Shown here: piece after piece, positions 14,492 to 19,505 of the stretch | How positions within the stretch are numbered: the first letter of the stretch is position 1 | Layout: every line of letters begins with the position of its first letter | The notes under the pieces: generated by a model | What the model was told of the DNA's origin: nothing | The model's database searches: none | What the model saw: the letters and a program-made list of their open reading frames with translations, nothing else | Translations under genes and position numbers: made by a program | Source: Salpingoeca rosetta | Taxonomy: Eukaryota; Protista; Choanoflagellata | Assembly (NCBI GenBank): GCA_033442325.1 | Contig: JAWQFM010000007.1 | Coordinates: forward strand, 69,007-133,006 | Length of the DNA: 64,000 nucleotides | Direction: 5' to 3'

Positions 14492-15745
14492 ACACAGGCA
14501 GACAGACAGACACACACACATGCCGGCTAACAAACGGACATTCGTCGTAGAAGCCGTAGATGCGGTTGATGGATGCGCACTCGTGGTTCCCGCGGAGGAG
14601 GAAGATGCGGTCCGGGTACATGATCTTGTACGCCAGCAGCAGGCACACTGTCTCCAGCGACTGGCAGCAGCAGCAGCGTAAGTGCACAGAGGAGGACGTG
14701 AGGTGATGGAAGGAGGCAGAGACGAACGGACACGTGCAAACAGCCAGATGCATGGTTGTGGTGCCAACCAAGCGGCGGGCAAAGCAAGCACATTGACAAA
14801 CAGCGGACAGCTAGCAACAAGCTGGGCTCCACACAACGCGTGCACACACGAACACACACACACACATACACGAACACACACACACACATACACGAACACA
14901 CACACATACACATACACTTACACGAACACACACACACACACGTACACACATACACGAACACACAGGCACGCACTTGTTTGCCGCGGTCGACGTAGTCGCC
15001 GAGGAAGAGGTAGGGCTGGGCAGGCGGGAAGCCGCCAAACTCAAACAGGCGCAGCAGGTCATAGTACTGGCCGTGCACATCACCTGATACAGCGCCGAAG
15101 CGCCGAAGCGACAAAACCAAACGACCACAACAATGAGACCACCCATCATCAGTGTCGGGAACACAGCCCAGCCTGGAGTCACACTACACCCCTCCCCCAA
15201 ACGAATGCAAGCGCGCGATGGCCCGGACCCACAGCCAGCCGTGTGCTCACCGCATATTTGGACGGGCGCGTCGACCTTGAGGAGAATGGGCTCGTTCATA
15301 AACGCCTCCCGTGCACCAATGCACAGGGCACGAATCTCAGCCTCGTCCAAGGTGACTGTCTTTCCGGGACGGCATCCCCTCACTGTTTGTCGGTGTTGTT
15401 GTTTGTCGTGAGTGTCGTTGTTGTCGCGAGTGTCGTCGTTTCAACGGCAAAACGCGGCGCAAAAACGTGAGCACGCCAACAACAAGCACAACAACAACAG
15501 CAGGGATAACAACAACTTAAACAACAACTTAAACAACAACAACAACAACTTCAACAACAACTTAAACAACAACAACAACAACTTAAACAACTTCAACAAC
15601 AACAACAACAACAACAACAACTTAAACAACAACAACAACAACAACAGTAACGCAGCCAGATACAAAGCAAACAGCACGTAGAGCACTGCGCACCTTCGAG
15701 GAGCCTGTTCACAATGTCCTGCACATCGACGTCCAGATCAGCCAT
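12820..15745 (-). CDS. PPP1C: Serine/threonine protein phosphatase PP1 catalytic subunit
   Basis: Spliced [98 protein letters not shown] at 15745; last exon ILKPADK...stop at 12820. Confidence 0.96.
15478..15646. repeat. (AAC)n repeat with TTA/TTC interruptions in PP1 intron 1
   Basis: Directly visible. Confidence 0.9.
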
Positions 15746-16087: not shown

Positions 16088-19000
16088 ATGGGGGACGCTG
16101 ACGAGCGGTACAATGCGTGGTTTCCACGCACACCACCGCGGGAGTGTGGGCTGAGGGTGGTGTGTTTCCACGGAGCAGGGTGCTCGGACACTGTCTACAC
16201 GATCAGCAGGGTTGCTGGTAAAATGGCGCATAACCCGCTCCTCGCGTGGCAACAGGACGAAGGTTTGTTCGTTGTTCAGTGTGAATGTGAATGTATGTAT
16301 GTGTGTGTGAATGTGTGTGTGTGTGTGACTGTGTGAGAGAGAGAGAGAGAGAGAGTGTGTGTGTGTGTGACTGTGTGTGTGTGTGTGATTGCGATTGCCG
16401 CTTGACCCCAGCTGAGGAGATGCGCGTGCGTGTGCATGTGTGCGCACGCAAGAGCAAGTGTCACAGTCCGCCTTCACGCTCATCAATCCTTGTGCGTTGT
16501 TCTGTTGTCTTCTTCTGCTGGCTTGGGTAGAGAACGATGTGCAGGTGCTTGGGGTGCAGTTGCCCGGACGTGATCAGCGGCACAGCGTCCCGCCGTTCAC
16601 CAGCATCAACGACATTGTCGATGCCTTTGTTGCAGACTGTGGCCATTTGTTCAACACCCCATACGTATGATCAACTTGATGCGTGACGTGTGATGTGACG
16701 CGGTTTAGGACGTGGTCCGTGGACTGGCCATCACTGGCGTGTTGTGGTGGTGTTCCGTATGGTGTCACTTGGATGTTGCGCTGTAGCGATGCACACATGC
16801 ACCAAAGTTTGCACTCAAAAAATACACACTCACATGCACGCGCACACGCACGCAAACACACTCATACAAACGCACACACGCACGCAAACACACGTATACA
16901 AACGCACACACGCACGCAAACACACCCATACAAACGCACACATGCACGCAAACACGCACACAAACGCATGCGCAAACACGCACACGCGATCAGGTCCTGG
17001 TTGGCCATTCCGTTGGCAGCTGGATCGCGCACGGCGTGGCCAAGAAGTTGATGGCGCAAGGATACGAGCCCCCTCTCCAGCTCTTCGTTTCCGCGTTTCC
17101 GCCGCCCACCATCCCAGCAGCCAAGCGCCCTTGGAACTCATCAAGGCGCGTCCGCATTGCTGGTTGCTTTGCACATGCGTCTCCATGTTTATCCCCACAA
17201 GCACGCCGCGCCACACGATTCTTGGACGTCCTCTCTCATTGTAATAATGTAACTCTGCATCCTTTCGCTCTACAGGGTAATGTCGGATTCAGAGCTGCAG
17301 GCGGAAGCGCGCGCGTGGGGCGTCAACCCGGTTGTGTTCCAGCAGCACGTCTGGTCCACGTATGCGCCCCTCTTCCGTGCAGACTTTCGCCTCTTTGACG
17401 AACAACGCCCCATGGTGTGTGTGTGTATGTGTGTGTATGTGTGTGTGCGGGTGAGAGAGAGTGTGTGTGGTTGTGTGTGTGTATGTATGTGGTTGTGTGC
17501 GCGTGCGTGCTTGCTGGTGGCTGTGTGCGTGTCTGTCGTTTGTGGACGCATTCATGCAAGCAATTGTGCCAGGAGTGTACCAATTCCTTCCTTCGACACA
17601 CCACGGGCTTAACCCCCACCCCCCGTTTCATTCATCCCATTTCCCTGCCTGCAGTCGTCGGCGGACGCGTGGCTTGGAAGCGTCCCCATCCACGTCACAG
17701 GCGCCTCGCACGACACCCGCATCATGCCCCATTTGCTGAGTGAGTCCGAGCATTGCAGCGTTGCCGCGTTGCCGTCTATTCCTCGTGTTCGTTGATGTAC
17801 GTCATCGTTGCACTGCATATGCAACATACCTGCCCGACTTCCTGTGTTCTCTCCTTCAATCGCGTCTCACACACCACCGACCCCACACGCCATTCTTGTG
17901 TTGCGTGTGGTGCTGCAGACGGGTGGCGGAAGCTGTCGTCGCACTGCAGCGTCGATACCGTCGATGGCGGACATCTCTTCGTCTTTGATGCACCGGCACG
18001 CGCCAGCGTAAGGGCATGGACGGGGGGAATGCATTTTCGGGAAAGGAGAGTTATGCGACACACACACACACACACACATACATACAGTATCTATCTCACT
18101 CTCACACACACACATGTACAATATCTACCTCACACTCGCACACACACACATACACACACACACATACATACATACAATATCTACCTCACACTCACACTCA
18201 CACACGTTTATTCACACACACACATGCGCACACATGCACACACATGCACACACACACACTCACCCCGCGCCTCATTCCCCTCCGTCTTTGCTCTCGCCAA
18301 CTCCGGCGGTGCAGTGGTTTGATATGATCATCAAGGGTGTCGATGCGTTGACAATATCGCGCCTGACGCCGCAGGTGCTCCTGCATGACGTCATCAGCTC
18401 CATCGTCAACCACGGCACCGCCCCCTCCATCGACCGCCTCGCACGCGCCCACAGCGAGACTGCAGAGACCATCACCACCGCGCTGTGCTCGCTGCCCGGC
18501 GTCGTCGTGCACCCGCTCCTGGCAAGCGTGGTCGAGGTGCAGCCCTTCTCGCTCGTGCCGTCGTCTGTCTGTATCCGCAGCCACATCTCCGACGCAACGT
18601 GGTGGGCGCCGACGCTGTTTGCTGCGCTCGGTGCTGCTGGCACGGCGCTGGCCGAACAGCCGCTGCTGTCCATCACGTGCTCTGTTGGCGGCGCTGAGCA
18701 GCAGGCGAGCATTGTCGTGCGCCACGGCCAGCTGTGCGGCGTCGACCAGGTCGACAGCGATGATGGTGGTGATGGTGGTGGTGTTGGCGATGGTGACGGC
18801 GAGGAGAGCGGCATTGGCAGCAGGAGCAGCCGGCTCGATGCTCATGGTGACGCCGTGCAAAGCAGTGACGTGTCTGACCTGGAGGCCGAGATACAGCGGG
18901 CGCTGCGGCTGCACGACCAGACCACCACCGCCTCCGTCGCCCTTCCCTCATCCTCGTCAGCACCACTGGCATTGTCATCGTCATCGTCATCGTCGTCGTT

Positions 19001-19505
19001 TGGTGCGCGAAGGAACAGCAGCGCCGTGACCGGCCAACATCACATCGACGAGCGAGGTGCTGTGCACGGTGCCCGCCGCCGCCACAGCGAGCAGCACGCA
19101 CCAGCTGCCTTCACGTCATCATCGTCAGCATTATCGTCGTCGTCATACCCAAGCAGCGCGCGTGGTAGCGGTGGGCGCGGGTGCATTGAGCTGAGCGCGG
19201 CCCAACTCGACCGCTGCTATGTGTACTTCCTCGTCGACCCCGTGCCCGTTATCGATGAGCAGGGACGCGAGCAGGAGATGAGGGCGCACACGCCGATGGC
19301 GCAGGAGTCAGCTGTACACCATGTGGATGTTGGATATGGCACGACGCTGCTGCTGTCCAACAAGGTTGCGCATGCGTGGCGTGAGCAGCACCACATGCCG
19401 TCAGGGCGCATTCTGCCGCTCGTGTCCGCCTTTGAGCTCGCCAAGCGCTGCTTTGCTTTCGCGGCTGTGCACGACCCGCAGACAGTAGGCAGCAGCGGGT
19501 GGTGA
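16088..19505 (+). CDS. Type II thioesterase (GrsT/OLAH-like) fused to a C-terminal MerB (organomercurial lyase)-like domain
   Basis: Exons from 16088 give VVCFHGAG, VQLPGRDQR, VLVGHSVGSW, LFVSAFPPP, FRADFRLFD, GASHD, DGGHLF. The last exon (18315-19505) continues without a stop into LHDVISSIVNHGTAPSI..L..GVVVHP..QPFSLVPS..TWWAP..ALG..YFLV..TLLL..HHMPSG..FELAKR. Confidence 0.8.

What the first reader, a model, noticed from the sequence alone, without database searches (positions are those of the whole stretch)
16088..19505. Type II thioesterase fused to a catalytically degenerate MerB (organomercurial lyase)-like domain
Seen in sequence: a complete thioesterase (GHSVG nucleophile, later Asp, GGH) whose last helix (WFDMIIKGV) shares an exon with about 380 further residues. 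These read LHDVISSIVNHGTAPSIDRLA..GVVVHP..QPFSLVPS..TWWAPTLFAALG..SITCSVG..IVVRHGQL, a Ser/Gly-rich insert, then YVYFLV..YGTTLLL..AWREQHHMPSGRILPLVSAFELAKR. Established knowledge: this order matches bacterial MerB-family proteins (HTH, PFS..P, W..CA.D/C.LG, C...F, W...H...G), which need two Cys and an Asp. Here those positions appear to be Thr, Ala and Gly. Inference: a horizontally acquired MerB fold repurposed as a non-catalytic module on an acyl-thioester hydrolase. I do not recognise this fusion.
Basis: partly seen in the sequence, partly recalled or inferred. Interest (0 to 1): 0.75.

Follow-up and report, generated by a model that had tools for sequence, protein, structure and literature searches.

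The report
Thioesterase fused to dead MerB-like domain
A choanoflagellate (Salpingoeca rosetta) gene joins an intact type II thioesterase to a domain with the fold of the bacterial mercury-detoxifying enzyme MerB that has lost all three active-site residues. Two related choanoflagellate genera keep the same fusion, and it has not been described, so it is a moderately interesting case of a bacterial-type fold reused as a non-enzymatic module.

Summary
The observation and most of the interpretation hold.

**The gene.** Window 16088-19505 (+) is S. rosetta gene PTSG_13169, a 654-aa protein from 7 exons. My exon reading translates exactly to the database protein.

**Thioesterase half.** Residues 1-269 are a canonical type II thioesterase (Pfam E 7e-20) with Ser109, Asp220 and His247 intact.

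**MerB-like half.**
- The last thioesterase helix and about 385 further residues share exon 7.
- An exhaustive HMMER search links that extension to genuine Pfam MerB members (E 7e-9).
- An AlphaFold model matches MerB crystal structures over nearly their whole length (Z 14.8, next unrelated fold 5.6).
- The Cys96/Asp99/Cys159 equivalents are Thr358, Ala361 and Gly598. They are also lost in the orthologues.

**Conservation.** The same fusion occurs in Microstomoeca roanoka (a complete transcript ORF) and in Barroeca monosierra.

**Nuances.**
- The nearest bacterial relatives are not canonical MerB. They are an uncharacterised, widespread three-Cys subfamily found outside mer operons.
- Bacterial origin is likely from the distribution, but the tree does not prove it (AU p 0.38).
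- "Non-catalytic" is an inference.

The scan had already noted this stretch in an overlapping window.

Interest is moderate: a new domain architecture, not a new kind of system.

The parts
16088..16262 (+). Exon 1. Start codon and the N-terminal strand of the thioesterase (VVCFHGAG).
   Evidence: The joined translation equals P0001.
16531..16664 (+). Exon 2 of the thioesterase.
   Evidence: Intron 1 is GT-AG and rich in TG repeats.
16994..17145 (+). Exon 3. Holds the GHSVG nucleophile elbow, with Ser109 at codon 17009-17011. It ends at a GC donor.
   Evidence: Pfam Thioesterase E 3.4e-7 on this exon alone. Triad alignment. Splice sites.
17276..17414 (+). Exon 4. Thioesterase lid region (PLFRADFRLFDE).
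17655..17739 (+). Exon 5. Holds catalytic Asp220 at codon 17712-17714.
17919..18007 (+). Exon 6. Holds catalytic His247 (GGH) at codon 17972-17974.
18315..18353 (+). Start of exon 7. End of the last thioesterase helix (residues 259-269) and a short linker of about 7 residues.
   Evidence: Solved thioesterases align up to residue 266-273. The model has helix 253-269 and the next helix from residue 277.
18354..18749 (+). N-terminal part of the MerB-like domain (residues 272-403).
- Winged-helix subdomain, then PFSLVPSS, TWWAPTLFAALG and a GG-hairpin.
- The Cys96 equivalent is Thr358 (18612-18614).
- The Asp99 equivalent is Ala361 (18621-18623).
   Evidence: phmmer hits, alignments. pLDDT is above 90. 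MerB structures match at Z 13-15.
18750..19178 (+). Insert of about 143 residues, rich in Asp, Gly and Ser, in a loop of the MerB-like core.
- It is predicted to be disordered apart from one helix, residues 441-463 (about 18861-18929).
- That helix is conserved in the orthologues (LE.EIQRAL.L).
- Parts of the insert are codon-scale microsatellites.
   Evidence: pLDDT is below 50 except at the helix. Tandem repeats at 18759-18802 and 18970-18999. The helix is conserved in P0005/L097 and P0027.
19179..19469 (+). C-terminal part of the MerB-like domain (residues 547-643): YVYFLVDP strand, VGYGTTLLL, AWREQHHMPSGRILPLVSAFELAKR. The Cys159 equivalent is Gly598 (19332-19334).
   Evidence: Pfam MerB below threshold at E 0.005, profile positions 84-125 of 126. 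hhalign columns. pLDDT about 95.
19470..19505 (+). Short unstructured tail and the TGA stop codon (19503-19505).

Best explanation
PTSG_13169 is one protein with two domains.

**Thioesterase half (residues 1-269)**
- It is an intact type II, discrete editing/releasing-type thioesterase with the Ser109-Asp220-His247 triad.
- Its likely job is to hydrolyse acyl groups from the phosphopantetheine arm of carrier proteins, or from acyl-CoA. The giant multi-module polyketide synthases encoded elsewhere in the S. rosetta genome are the obvious clients.

**MerB-like half (residues ~272-643)**
- It has the fold of organomercurial lyase MerB.
- It descends from an uncharacterised bacterial three-Cys MerB-like subfamily.
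- It was most probably acquired by gene transfer in the common ancestor of S. rosetta, Microstomoeca and Barroeca, and joined to the last exon of the thioesterase gene.
- Since then it has lost all three thiol/carboxylate site residues (now Thr, Ala, Gly), dropped the bacterial C-terminal tail, and gained a disordered insert carrying one conserved helix.
- It therefore cannot cleave carbon-mercury bonds or hold a metal in the MerB manner.
- It most likely serves the thioesterase as a non-catalytic ligand-binding or docking module.

**Shown:** gene structure, fusion, homology, fold, loss of the site residues, conservation in three genera.

**Inferred:** the thioesterase substrate, the transfer, and the role of the MerB-like domain.
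For: **Fusion**
- One exon and one frame carry both parts, and the model equals the database protein.
- M. roanoka has a complete Trinity ORF of 522 aa with the same order. It is 53% identical and aligns contiguously over residues 4-398.
- The B. monosierra model of 564 aa has the same order.

**Thioesterase**
- Pfam PF00975 E 6.9e-20, 72.7 bits against a cut-off of 26.4.
- PDB hits are RifR, surfactin TE II, YbtT and human OLAH at E 1e-14 to 1e-10, with the triad aligned.

**MerB homology**
- phmmer E 6.9e-9 to P0004 in a library of 1.84 billion proteins. P0004 scores Pfam MerB E 2e-32.
- The M. roanoka orthologue passes the Pfam MerB cut-off, 31.8 against 27 bits.
- hhalign of the choanoflagellate plus subfamily profile against canonical MerB gives probability 97.2%, E 3e-11 over 168 columns.
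- Foldseek's top 11 PDB hits are all MerB.
- VIA-align gives Z 14.8 with 187 of 206 residues of MerB2 (5c17) aligned. The next unrelated fold scores Z 5.6.
- The ESM Atlas model matches MerB clusters independently, TM 0.72.

**Lost site:**

**Distribution**
- No paralogue in the S. rosetta genome.
- Apart from the S. rosetta protein itself, the only eukaryote-like hits belong to three choanoflagellate orthologues: M. roanoka, B. monosierra, and one unnamed metagenome fragment.
- B. monosierra's closest relatives are S. rosetta, other Salpingoeca species and M. roanoka (PMC11389367).
- The bacterial subfamily is found in many phyla, with 266 confirmed stretches.

**Tree:** the choanoflagellates are one clade (99*) on the subfamily side of a 100* split from canonical MerB.

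**Candidate clients:** at least 10 ketosynthase domains in two loci of the genome.
Against: - No experiment or expression data for S. rosetta itself was examined here.
- The S. rosetta domain on its own is below Pfam's MerB cut-off (15-17 bits). It has no NCBIfam hit and no direct phmmer hit in the PDB.
- The choanoflagellate-only profile against canonical MerB is weak, probability 14%.
- Placement inside the bacterial diversity is not resolved. AU p is 0.38 for bacteria as one clade, and long branches are involved.
- The function of the bacterial subfamily is unknown, so "degenerate" is relative to an unknown ancestral activity.
- A new catalytic site built from other residues is not excluded. 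A Cys just before the YFPV strand recurs in the choanoflagellate copies.
- The polyketide synthase loci are on other contigs, so nothing ties them to this gene.
- The thioesterase half of the full-length model has only moderate confidence, and domain packing could not be judged.
Confidence: 0.6

Rival explanations
1. The MerB-like domain is still an enzyme. It would use a rebuilt active site, for example the Cys that recurs just before the YFPV strand together with conserved Arg, His or Asp residues. It would act on the product or substrate of the thioesterase, making the protein bifunctional.
For: - The domain is conserved in three genera at 32-39% identity, with fold-defining motifs kept.
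- A Cys sits 3-4 residues before the F(P/L)V strand in all four choanoflagellate sequences and is absent from the bacterial relatives.
- Bacterial relatives are also found fused to another acyl-thioester enzyme, a GNAT acetyltransferase (P0009).
Against: - All three positions that define chemistry in MerB and in the three-Cys subfamily are replaced by Thr/Ser, Ala and Gly/Asp.
- The branch leading to the choanoflagellate clade is very long, about 4 changes per column. That fits relaxed or changed constraint.
- I had no coordinates with which to inspect the pocket.
Confidence: 0.15
2. The fusion is an annotation or assembly artefact. On this view the thioesterase and the MerB-like part are separate products, or the MerB-like part is bacterial contamination.
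For: - The MerB-like part is a single intron-free stretch of 1.19 kb, whereas the thioesterase coding sequence has six introns.
- No S. rosetta transcript data were examined here.
Against: - The last thioesterase helix and the MerB-like domain lie in one exon with no stop between them.
- The M. roanoka transcript ORF has the same fusion.
- The locus lies between ordinary eukaryotic genes with introns on a 321-kb contig.
- GC3 of the extension is 0.77-0.83, similar to the thioesterase exons at 0.74.
Confidence: 0.03
3. The MerB-like domain was not acquired from bacteria. It would be an old eukaryotic gene kept only in this small choanoflagellate clade.
For: - The AU test does not reject a tree with all bacterial subfamily members as one clade and the choanoflagellates outside it (p 0.38).
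- The branches are long.
Against: - No other eukaryote appears among 1.84 billion representatives at E<=1e-3. That library draws on a collection holding EukProt records, the source of the M. roanoka and B. monosierra orthologues.
- The subfamily spans at least ten bacterial phyla.
- In the free trees the choanoflagellates sit inside the bacterial rows (95-98*).
- The acquired part has no introns.
Confidence: 0.12
4. The MerB-like domain is a functional organomercurial lyase or mercury-binding domain.
For: It has the fold and homology of MerB.
Against: - Cys96, Asp99 and Cys159 are named as the essential, strictly conserved signatures of MerB (PMC8261052). Here they are Thr, Ala and Gly.
- No NCBIfam MerB hit.
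- No merA-type context was seen.
Confidence: 0.02

Closest known systems
Type II thioesterases (Pfam PF00975): RifR, surfactin SrfD/TE II, YbtT, animal OLAH (S-acyl fatty acid synthase thioesterase, medium chain)
   Same: Residues 1-269 match the family along its length with the Ser-Asp-His triad in place. The nearest Atlas clusters are animal OLAH and bacterial TE II.
   Different: Among the relatives these searches returned, none carries a C-terminal MerB-like domain. Here the last helix runs into about 385 more residues. Whether the thioesterase half is vertical (OLAH-like) or itself bacterial was not resolved.
Organomercurial lyase MerB / MerB2 (Pfam PF03243; PDB 3f0o, 5c17)
   Same: Same fold over almost the whole chain: Z 13.9-14.8 with 180-187 residues aligned. 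Same order of motifs. Profile-profile probability is 97% when the bacterial subfamily bridges the gap.
   Different: - Cys96, Asp99 and Cys159 are replaced by Thr358, Ala361 and Gly598.
- A 143-residue disordered insert sits in a core loop.
- The domain is eukaryotic and fused to a thioesterase.
- It scores below the Pfam and NCBIfam cut-offs.
Uncharacterised bacterial three-Cys MerB-like subfamily (WWGxCxWCxLG; e.g. P0004, P0008 and the loci)
   Same: These are the closest sequence relatives (E 7e-9 to 1e-3). They lie on the same side of the 100*-supported split from canonical MerB. The motifs HPFS.PT, WW, LG, GGE, FP.P and W..H..P.G are shared.
   Different: - The bacterial proteins are stand-alone proteins of about 230 aa.
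- They have Cys at the first and third MerB site positions in every sequence aligned, and at the second in nearly all.
- They carry an extra C-terminal tail (WYGxH..W.KWs..A..iF), which the choanoflagellate domain lacks, along with the three Cys.
- Their function is unknown. No mer genes or conserved neighbours were found.
SaoL, the MerB-like organometallic lyase of the selenocysteine-assisted organometallic system (NCBIfam NF040728)
   Same: It is another MerB-related branch. The bacterial relatives of this domain hit it weakly (19-35 bits against a cut-off of 140).
   Different: The S. rosetta protein does not hit it at all. SaoL has a Cys-Sec site (PMC13188914), whereas this domain has none.

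Membership tests
Type II thioesterase (Pfam PF00975) | Family profile score above the curated cut-off | tested here: met
   72.7 bits against 26.4, E 6.9e-20, residues 54-251.
Type II thioesterase (Pfam PF00975) | GxSxG nucleophile, catalytic Asp and His of the alpha/beta-hydrolase triad | tested here: met
   GHSVG Ser109, Asp220 and GGH His247 align with the triad of 7e3z, RifR and others.
Type II thioesterase (Pfam PF00975) | Discrete protein, not a domain of a synthase, that hydrolyses acyl-S-carrier-protein or acyl-CoA | not testable with these tools
   No synthase domains are present in the protein. The activity needs an assay.
Pfam MerB family (PF03243) | Family profile score above the curated cut-off (27 bits) | tested here: not met
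   S. rosetta scores 15-17.3 bits, and only on the last ~40 profile positions. Its M. roanoka orthologue passes at 31.8 bits.
Pfam MerB family (PF03243) | Significant sequence homology to family members | tested here: met
   - phmmer E 6.9e-9 to P0004, which scores Pfam MerB E 2e-32.
- hhalign probability 97.2%, E 3e-11 against canonical MerB through the subfamily profile.
Pfam MerB family (PF03243) | MerB fold | tested here: met
   - AlphaFold model with pLDDT above 90 in the folded parts.
- Foldseek's top 11 hits are all MerB.
- Z 14.8 with 187 of 206 residues aligned, next unrelated fold Z 5.6.
- Atlas TM 0.72.
Canonical organomercurial lyase MerB (NCBIfam NF009710 / NF033555) | Cys96, Asp99 and Cys159 (R831b numbering) | tested here: not met
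   They are Thr358, Ala361 and Gly598. The orthologues have Ser/Ala/Asp and Ser/Ala/Gly. The signature is as given in PMC8261052.
Canonical organomercurial lyase MerB (NCBIfam NF009710 / NF033555) | NCBIfam model score above the cut-off | tested here: not met
   No hit at E<=1 for the extension or at E<=0.01 for the whole protein.
Canonical organomercurial lyase MerB (NCBIfam NF009710 / NF033555) | Carbon-mercury bond cleavage | not testable with these tools
   Needs an enzyme assay. A negative result is predicted.
Bacterial three-Cys MerB-like subfamily | Groups with the subfamily rather than with canonical MerB | tested here: met
   A 100*-supported split puts the choanoflagellates with the subfamily. 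Whether they sit inside it or beside it is unresolved (AU p 0.38).
Bacterial three-Cys MerB-like subfamily | WWGxCxWCxLG motif, third Cys, and the C-terminal WYGxH...W.KW tail | tested here: not met
   The motif reads TWWAPTLFAALG. There is no third Cys, and the tail is absent.

The most novel reading that the evidence does not exclude
The disarmed MerB-like domain, with its conserved insert helix, would be a new kind of accessory module. It would dock the thioesterase onto carrier proteins of the choanoflagellate's giant polyketide synthases, or hold the hydrophobic acyl product. Its bacterial parents, the three-Cys MerB-like proteins (also found fused to a GNAT acetyltransferase), would then be an unrecognised enzyme family acting on thioester-linked or thiol-reactive small molecules rather than on mercury compounds.
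Probability: 0.2. Interest if true: 0.65.

Novelty: new variant of a known kind. Interest (0 to 1): 0.45.

Why it matters
- **A traceable history.** A bacterial-type enzyme fold entered a close relative of animals, was welded to a host enzyme, lost its chemistry and was kept for some other use. A pseudoenzyme domain with that history is uncommon and easy to follow here.
- **An experimental handle.** It is a starting point for choanoflagellate polyketide and lipid metabolism, which is almost unexplored, in a species where gene knock-outs are possible.
- **An overlooked bacterial family.** The work exposes a widespread MerB-like family with three Cys at the site positions and no link to mer operons. 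Surveys of mercury-resistance genes that rely on Pfam MerB would miscount these as MerB.
- **Limits.** It does not open a long-standing question, and the protein's role is unknown.

Tried and rejected
**Searches that found nothing or too little**
- NCBIfam on the extension gave no hit.
- phmmer of the extension against PDB sequences gave only a chance low-complexity hit to an ATP synthase delta chain.
- The word-based protein search found only the protein itself, both with exon 7 and with residues 259-400. Low-complexity words and the length window hid the orthologues.
- Pfam MerB on the whole S. rosetta genome gave only a chance-level hit on another contig (E 0.49). There is no paralogue of the domain.
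- A profile of the four choanoflagellate sequences alone against canonical MerB was weak (probability 14%). The comparison works only with the bacterial subfamily as a bridge.
- Literature searches found no paper that treats this gene, a choanoflagellate MerB-like gene, or a MerB-thioesterase pairing.

**Calls that failed and were redone another way**
- Fetching plasmid pI258 by an accession recalled from memory failed because it is not in the collection. Canonical MerB was taken instead from genomes found with NCBIfam NF009710.
- The first alignment given to the search for related loci was too diverse.
- My first Pfam call had a frame error in exon 4.

**Inconclusive**
- The AU test of nesting within bacteria.
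- The careful tree did not finish in time, so the quick trees were used.
- Gene neighbourhoods of the bacterial subfamily showed no conserved partner and no mer genes.
- The full-length model gave no usable information on domain packing.

**Not resolved**
- The origin of the thioesterase half.

**Handling of the spliced model**
- My own model went to searches exon by exon, by reference.
That joined step is left out.
- Whole-protein searches used the database protein P0001.
- A local script only checked that the joined exons translate to P0001.
Full report
**What is there**

The window is from the choanoflagellate Salpingoeca rosetta (G000:C7:69007-133006). Exon 7 of the finding matches NCBI protein PTSG_13169 at 100% identity. 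That protein is called "hypothetical protein" by NCBI and "Thioesterase domain-containing protein" by UniRef, is 654 aa long and is held here as P0001.

I read seven exons from the DNA: 16088-16262, 16531-16664, 16994-17145, 17276-17414, 17655-17739, 17919-18007 and 18315-19505.
- The introns are rich in TG/AC repeats.
- Five introns are GT-AG and intron 3 is GC-AG.
- A local script confirmed that these exons translate exactly to P0001.

No self-joined sequence was handed to any search tool. Whole-protein searches used the database protein P0001.

**Thioesterase half**

- Exon 3 alone passes Pfam Thioesterase (E 3.4e-7).
- The whole protein scores E 6.9e-20, 72.7 bits against a cut-off of 26.4, over residues 54-251.
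- The best solved relatives are discrete type II thioesterases: 7e3z, RifR, surfactin TE II, YbtT and human OLAH, at E 6e-14 to 2e-10. Ser109 (GHSVG), Asp220 and His247 (GGH) align with their triad.
- Some of these alignments run to residue 266-273, which is inside exon 7.
- In the full-length model the last thioesterase helix is 253-269. A linker of about 7 residues follows, and the next domain begins at 277.

**The extension is a MerB-fold homologue**

On its own the S. rosetta sequence gives only a sub-threshold Pfam MerB hit (E 0.005, 17 bits, profile positions 84-125 of 126). It has no NCBIfam hit and no direct PDB sequence hit. Four other lines settle the question.

1. *Exhaustive sequence search.* phmmer of exon 7 against 1.84 billion representatives gives 25 hits at E<=1e-3.
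   - Four of them come from three choanoflagellate orthologues, described under the next heading.
   - The ten bacterial or metagenomic hits I scanned are Pfam MerB members, for example P0004 (E 6.9e-9 to the query, Pfam MerB E 2e-32). The remaining hits align with them.
2. *Profile comparison.* A profile of these sequences against seven proteins found with the NCBIfam MerB model NF009710 gives hhalign probability 97.2%, E 3e-11 over 168 columns. Only one of the seven passes the model's cut-off, but all carry the Cys, Asp and Cys signature.
3. *My own structure model.* An AlphaFold model built on the 26-sequence alignment has pLDDT above 90 for exon-7 residues 20-150 and 290-385.
   - Foldseek's eleven best PDB hits are all MerB entries (5c17: E 1e-5, TM 0.70 by target).
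   - VIA-align gives Z 14.8 to MerB2 5c17 (187 of 206 residues, rmsd 3.3) and Z 13.9 to MerB 3f0o.
   - The next unrelated fold scores 5.6 and covers only the winged-helix part.
4. *Independent model.* The ESM Atlas's own model of this protein matches MerB-family clusters at TM 0.72 and 0.63.

**The fusion is conserved**

- P0003 is a complete 522-aa ORF from the Microstomoeca roanoka transcriptome (EukProt). It has the same order of domains and passes Pfam cut-offs for both Thioesterase and MerB (31.8 bits). It aligns to P0001 without a break across the junction, residues 4-398 at 53% identity.
- P0027 is the 564-aa Barroeca monosierra model. It has the same architecture.
- L097 is an 836-bp metagenome contig that carries the 3' part of a further orthologue.
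- A published three-gene phylogeny gives S. rosetta, other Salpingoeca species and M. roanoka as the closest relatives of B. monosierra (PMC11389367).
- No other eukaryote appeared in the exhaustive search. S. rosetta has no paralogue.

**The active site is gone**

The alignment of P0004 to MerB2 and the alignments with canonical MerB fix the columns.

| MerB position | Bacterial subfamily | S. rosetta | M. roanoka | B. monosierra |
|---|---|---|---|---|
| Cys96 | Cys | Thr358 | Ser | Ser |
| Asp99 | Cys | Ala361 | Ala | Ala |
| Cys159 | Cys | Gly598 | Asp | Gly |

- The Gly598 column can shift by one residue to Tyr. No Cys or Asp lies nearby.
- Cys96, Asp99 and Cys159 are the essential, conserved signatures used to define MerB (PMC8261052).

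Carbon-mercury lyase chemistry and MerB-type thiolate metal binding are therefore excluded on sequence grounds. That the domain has no catalytic role at all is an inference.

**What the ancestor was**

The nearest relatives are not canonical MerB. They are proteins of about 230 aa with the motif WWGxCxWCxLG, a third Cys, and an extra C-terminal tail.
- They score far below the NCBIfam cut-offs for MerB and for the MerB-like lyase SaoL.
- A pattern scan of species-representative genomes confirmed 266 stretches. They come from Gemmatimonadota, Acidobacteriota, Myxococcota, Pseudomonadota (many Pseudoalteromonas), Bacteroidota, Chloroflexota, Deinococcota, Planctomycetota, Ignavibacteriota and others.
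- In 76 loci no neighbouring gene family recurs beyond close relatives, and no mer genes are present.
- One branch is fused to a GNAT acetyltransferase (P0009).

In maximum-likelihood trees the three choanoflagellate sequences form one clade (99*). They lie with this subfamily on one side of a 100*-supported split from canonical MerB. In the free trees they sit among the WWAPC-type members, on a very long branch.

An AU test does not reject a tree with all bacterial members together and the choanoflagellates outside (p 0.38). Transfer from bacteria is therefore the most economical reading of the distribution, and the acquired part is intron-free, but it is not proven.

**Changes since the fusion**

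- The bacterial tail is gone.
- A loop of the core holds an insert of about 143 residues in S. rosetta (about 45 in M. roanoka and about 95 in B. monosierra).
- The insert is predicted to be disordered, and parts of it are codon-scale microsatellites.
- It contains one helix, residues 441-463, whose LE.EIQRAL.L core is conserved in B. monosierra and in the metagenome orthologue.

**How it most likely works**

- *Shown:* an intact type II thioesterase joined by a short linker to a conserved, well-folded MerB-like domain with no MerB site.
- *Inferred:* the thioesterase removes acyl groups from carrier proteins or CoA.
  - S. rosetta encodes at least ten ketosynthase domains in two giant loci (C5:2.052-2.065 Mb and C21:701-721 kb). 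These are candidate clients, though nothing links them to this gene.
  - The MerB-like domain has small residues where the thiols were. It most likely binds a ligand or a partner protein, or regulates the thioesterase.

I put about 0.6 on this overall reading. Within it, I put more than 0.9 on the fusion, the homology and the lost site, and about 0.5 on the docking or ligand-binding role.

**Rivals**

- A rebuilt active site (0.15).
- Ancient vertical inheritance rather than transfer (0.12).
- An annotation artefact (0.03).
- A working mercury lyase (0.02).

**Novelty**

- The gene is in the databases as hypothetical, and one orthologue carries precomputed Pfam MerB.
- I found no paper that treats this gene, a choanoflagellate MerB-like gene or a thioesterase-MerB pairing.
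- It is a new domain architecture made from two known folds, and a lineage-restricted pseudoenzyme domain.
- The scan had already noted this same stretch in an overlapping window (s1-431486).
- Interest is moderate.

Noticed in passing
L009-L088 (bacterial loci); P0004, P0008, P0009: - There is a widespread bacterial MerB-like subfamily with the motif WWGxCxWCxLG. Cys replaces Asp99, a third Cys is present, and there is an extra C-terminal tail.
- 266 stretches were confirmed across many phyla. There are no mer genes and no conserved neighbours.
- One branch is fused to a GNAT acetyltransferase.
- The function is unknown. Pfam files these proteins as MerB although they fail the MerB signature.
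   Followed up: partly
G000:C5:2052751-2064621 and G000:C21:701434-721145: S. rosetta carries two giant multi-ketosynthase loci. One has an open frame of 6015 aa with four KS domains. These are possible clients of the thioesterase, but they lie on other contigs.
   Followed up: no
window 18861-18929: The otherwise disordered insert of the MerB-like domain contains one predicted helix (SDVSDLEAEIQRALRLHDQ). It is conserved in B. monosierra and in a metagenome orthologue (L097).
   Followed up: partly
window 17146-17275: Intron 3 of the gene uses a GC donor (GC-AG). The other five introns are GT-AG.
   Followed up: yes
P0027 (Barroeca monosierra model), residues ~96-110: The B. monosierra model lacks the GHSVG nucleophile motif exactly where S. 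rosetta has the exon 2/3 junction. This is probably a gene-model error, but it could be a real loss of thioesterase activity.
   Followed up: no
window 14527-15120 (-): An exon of a PP1-type Ser/Thr protein phosphatase ([21 protein letters not shown]...[12 protein letters not shown]) lies just upstream on the opposite strand.
   Followed up: no
window 18759-18802 and 18970-18999: There are codon-scale microsatellites inside the coding insert: GATGGT repeats giving Asp/Gly runs and CATCGT repeats giving Ser runs. They suggest the insert grew by replication slippage.
   Followed up: partly
L025:8397-9236, L004:7207-7674: Small GNAT acetyltransferase and glyoxalase/bleomycin-resistance family genes lie near some bacterial three-Cys MerB-like genes. 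The association is too irregular to call an operon.
   Followed up: partly
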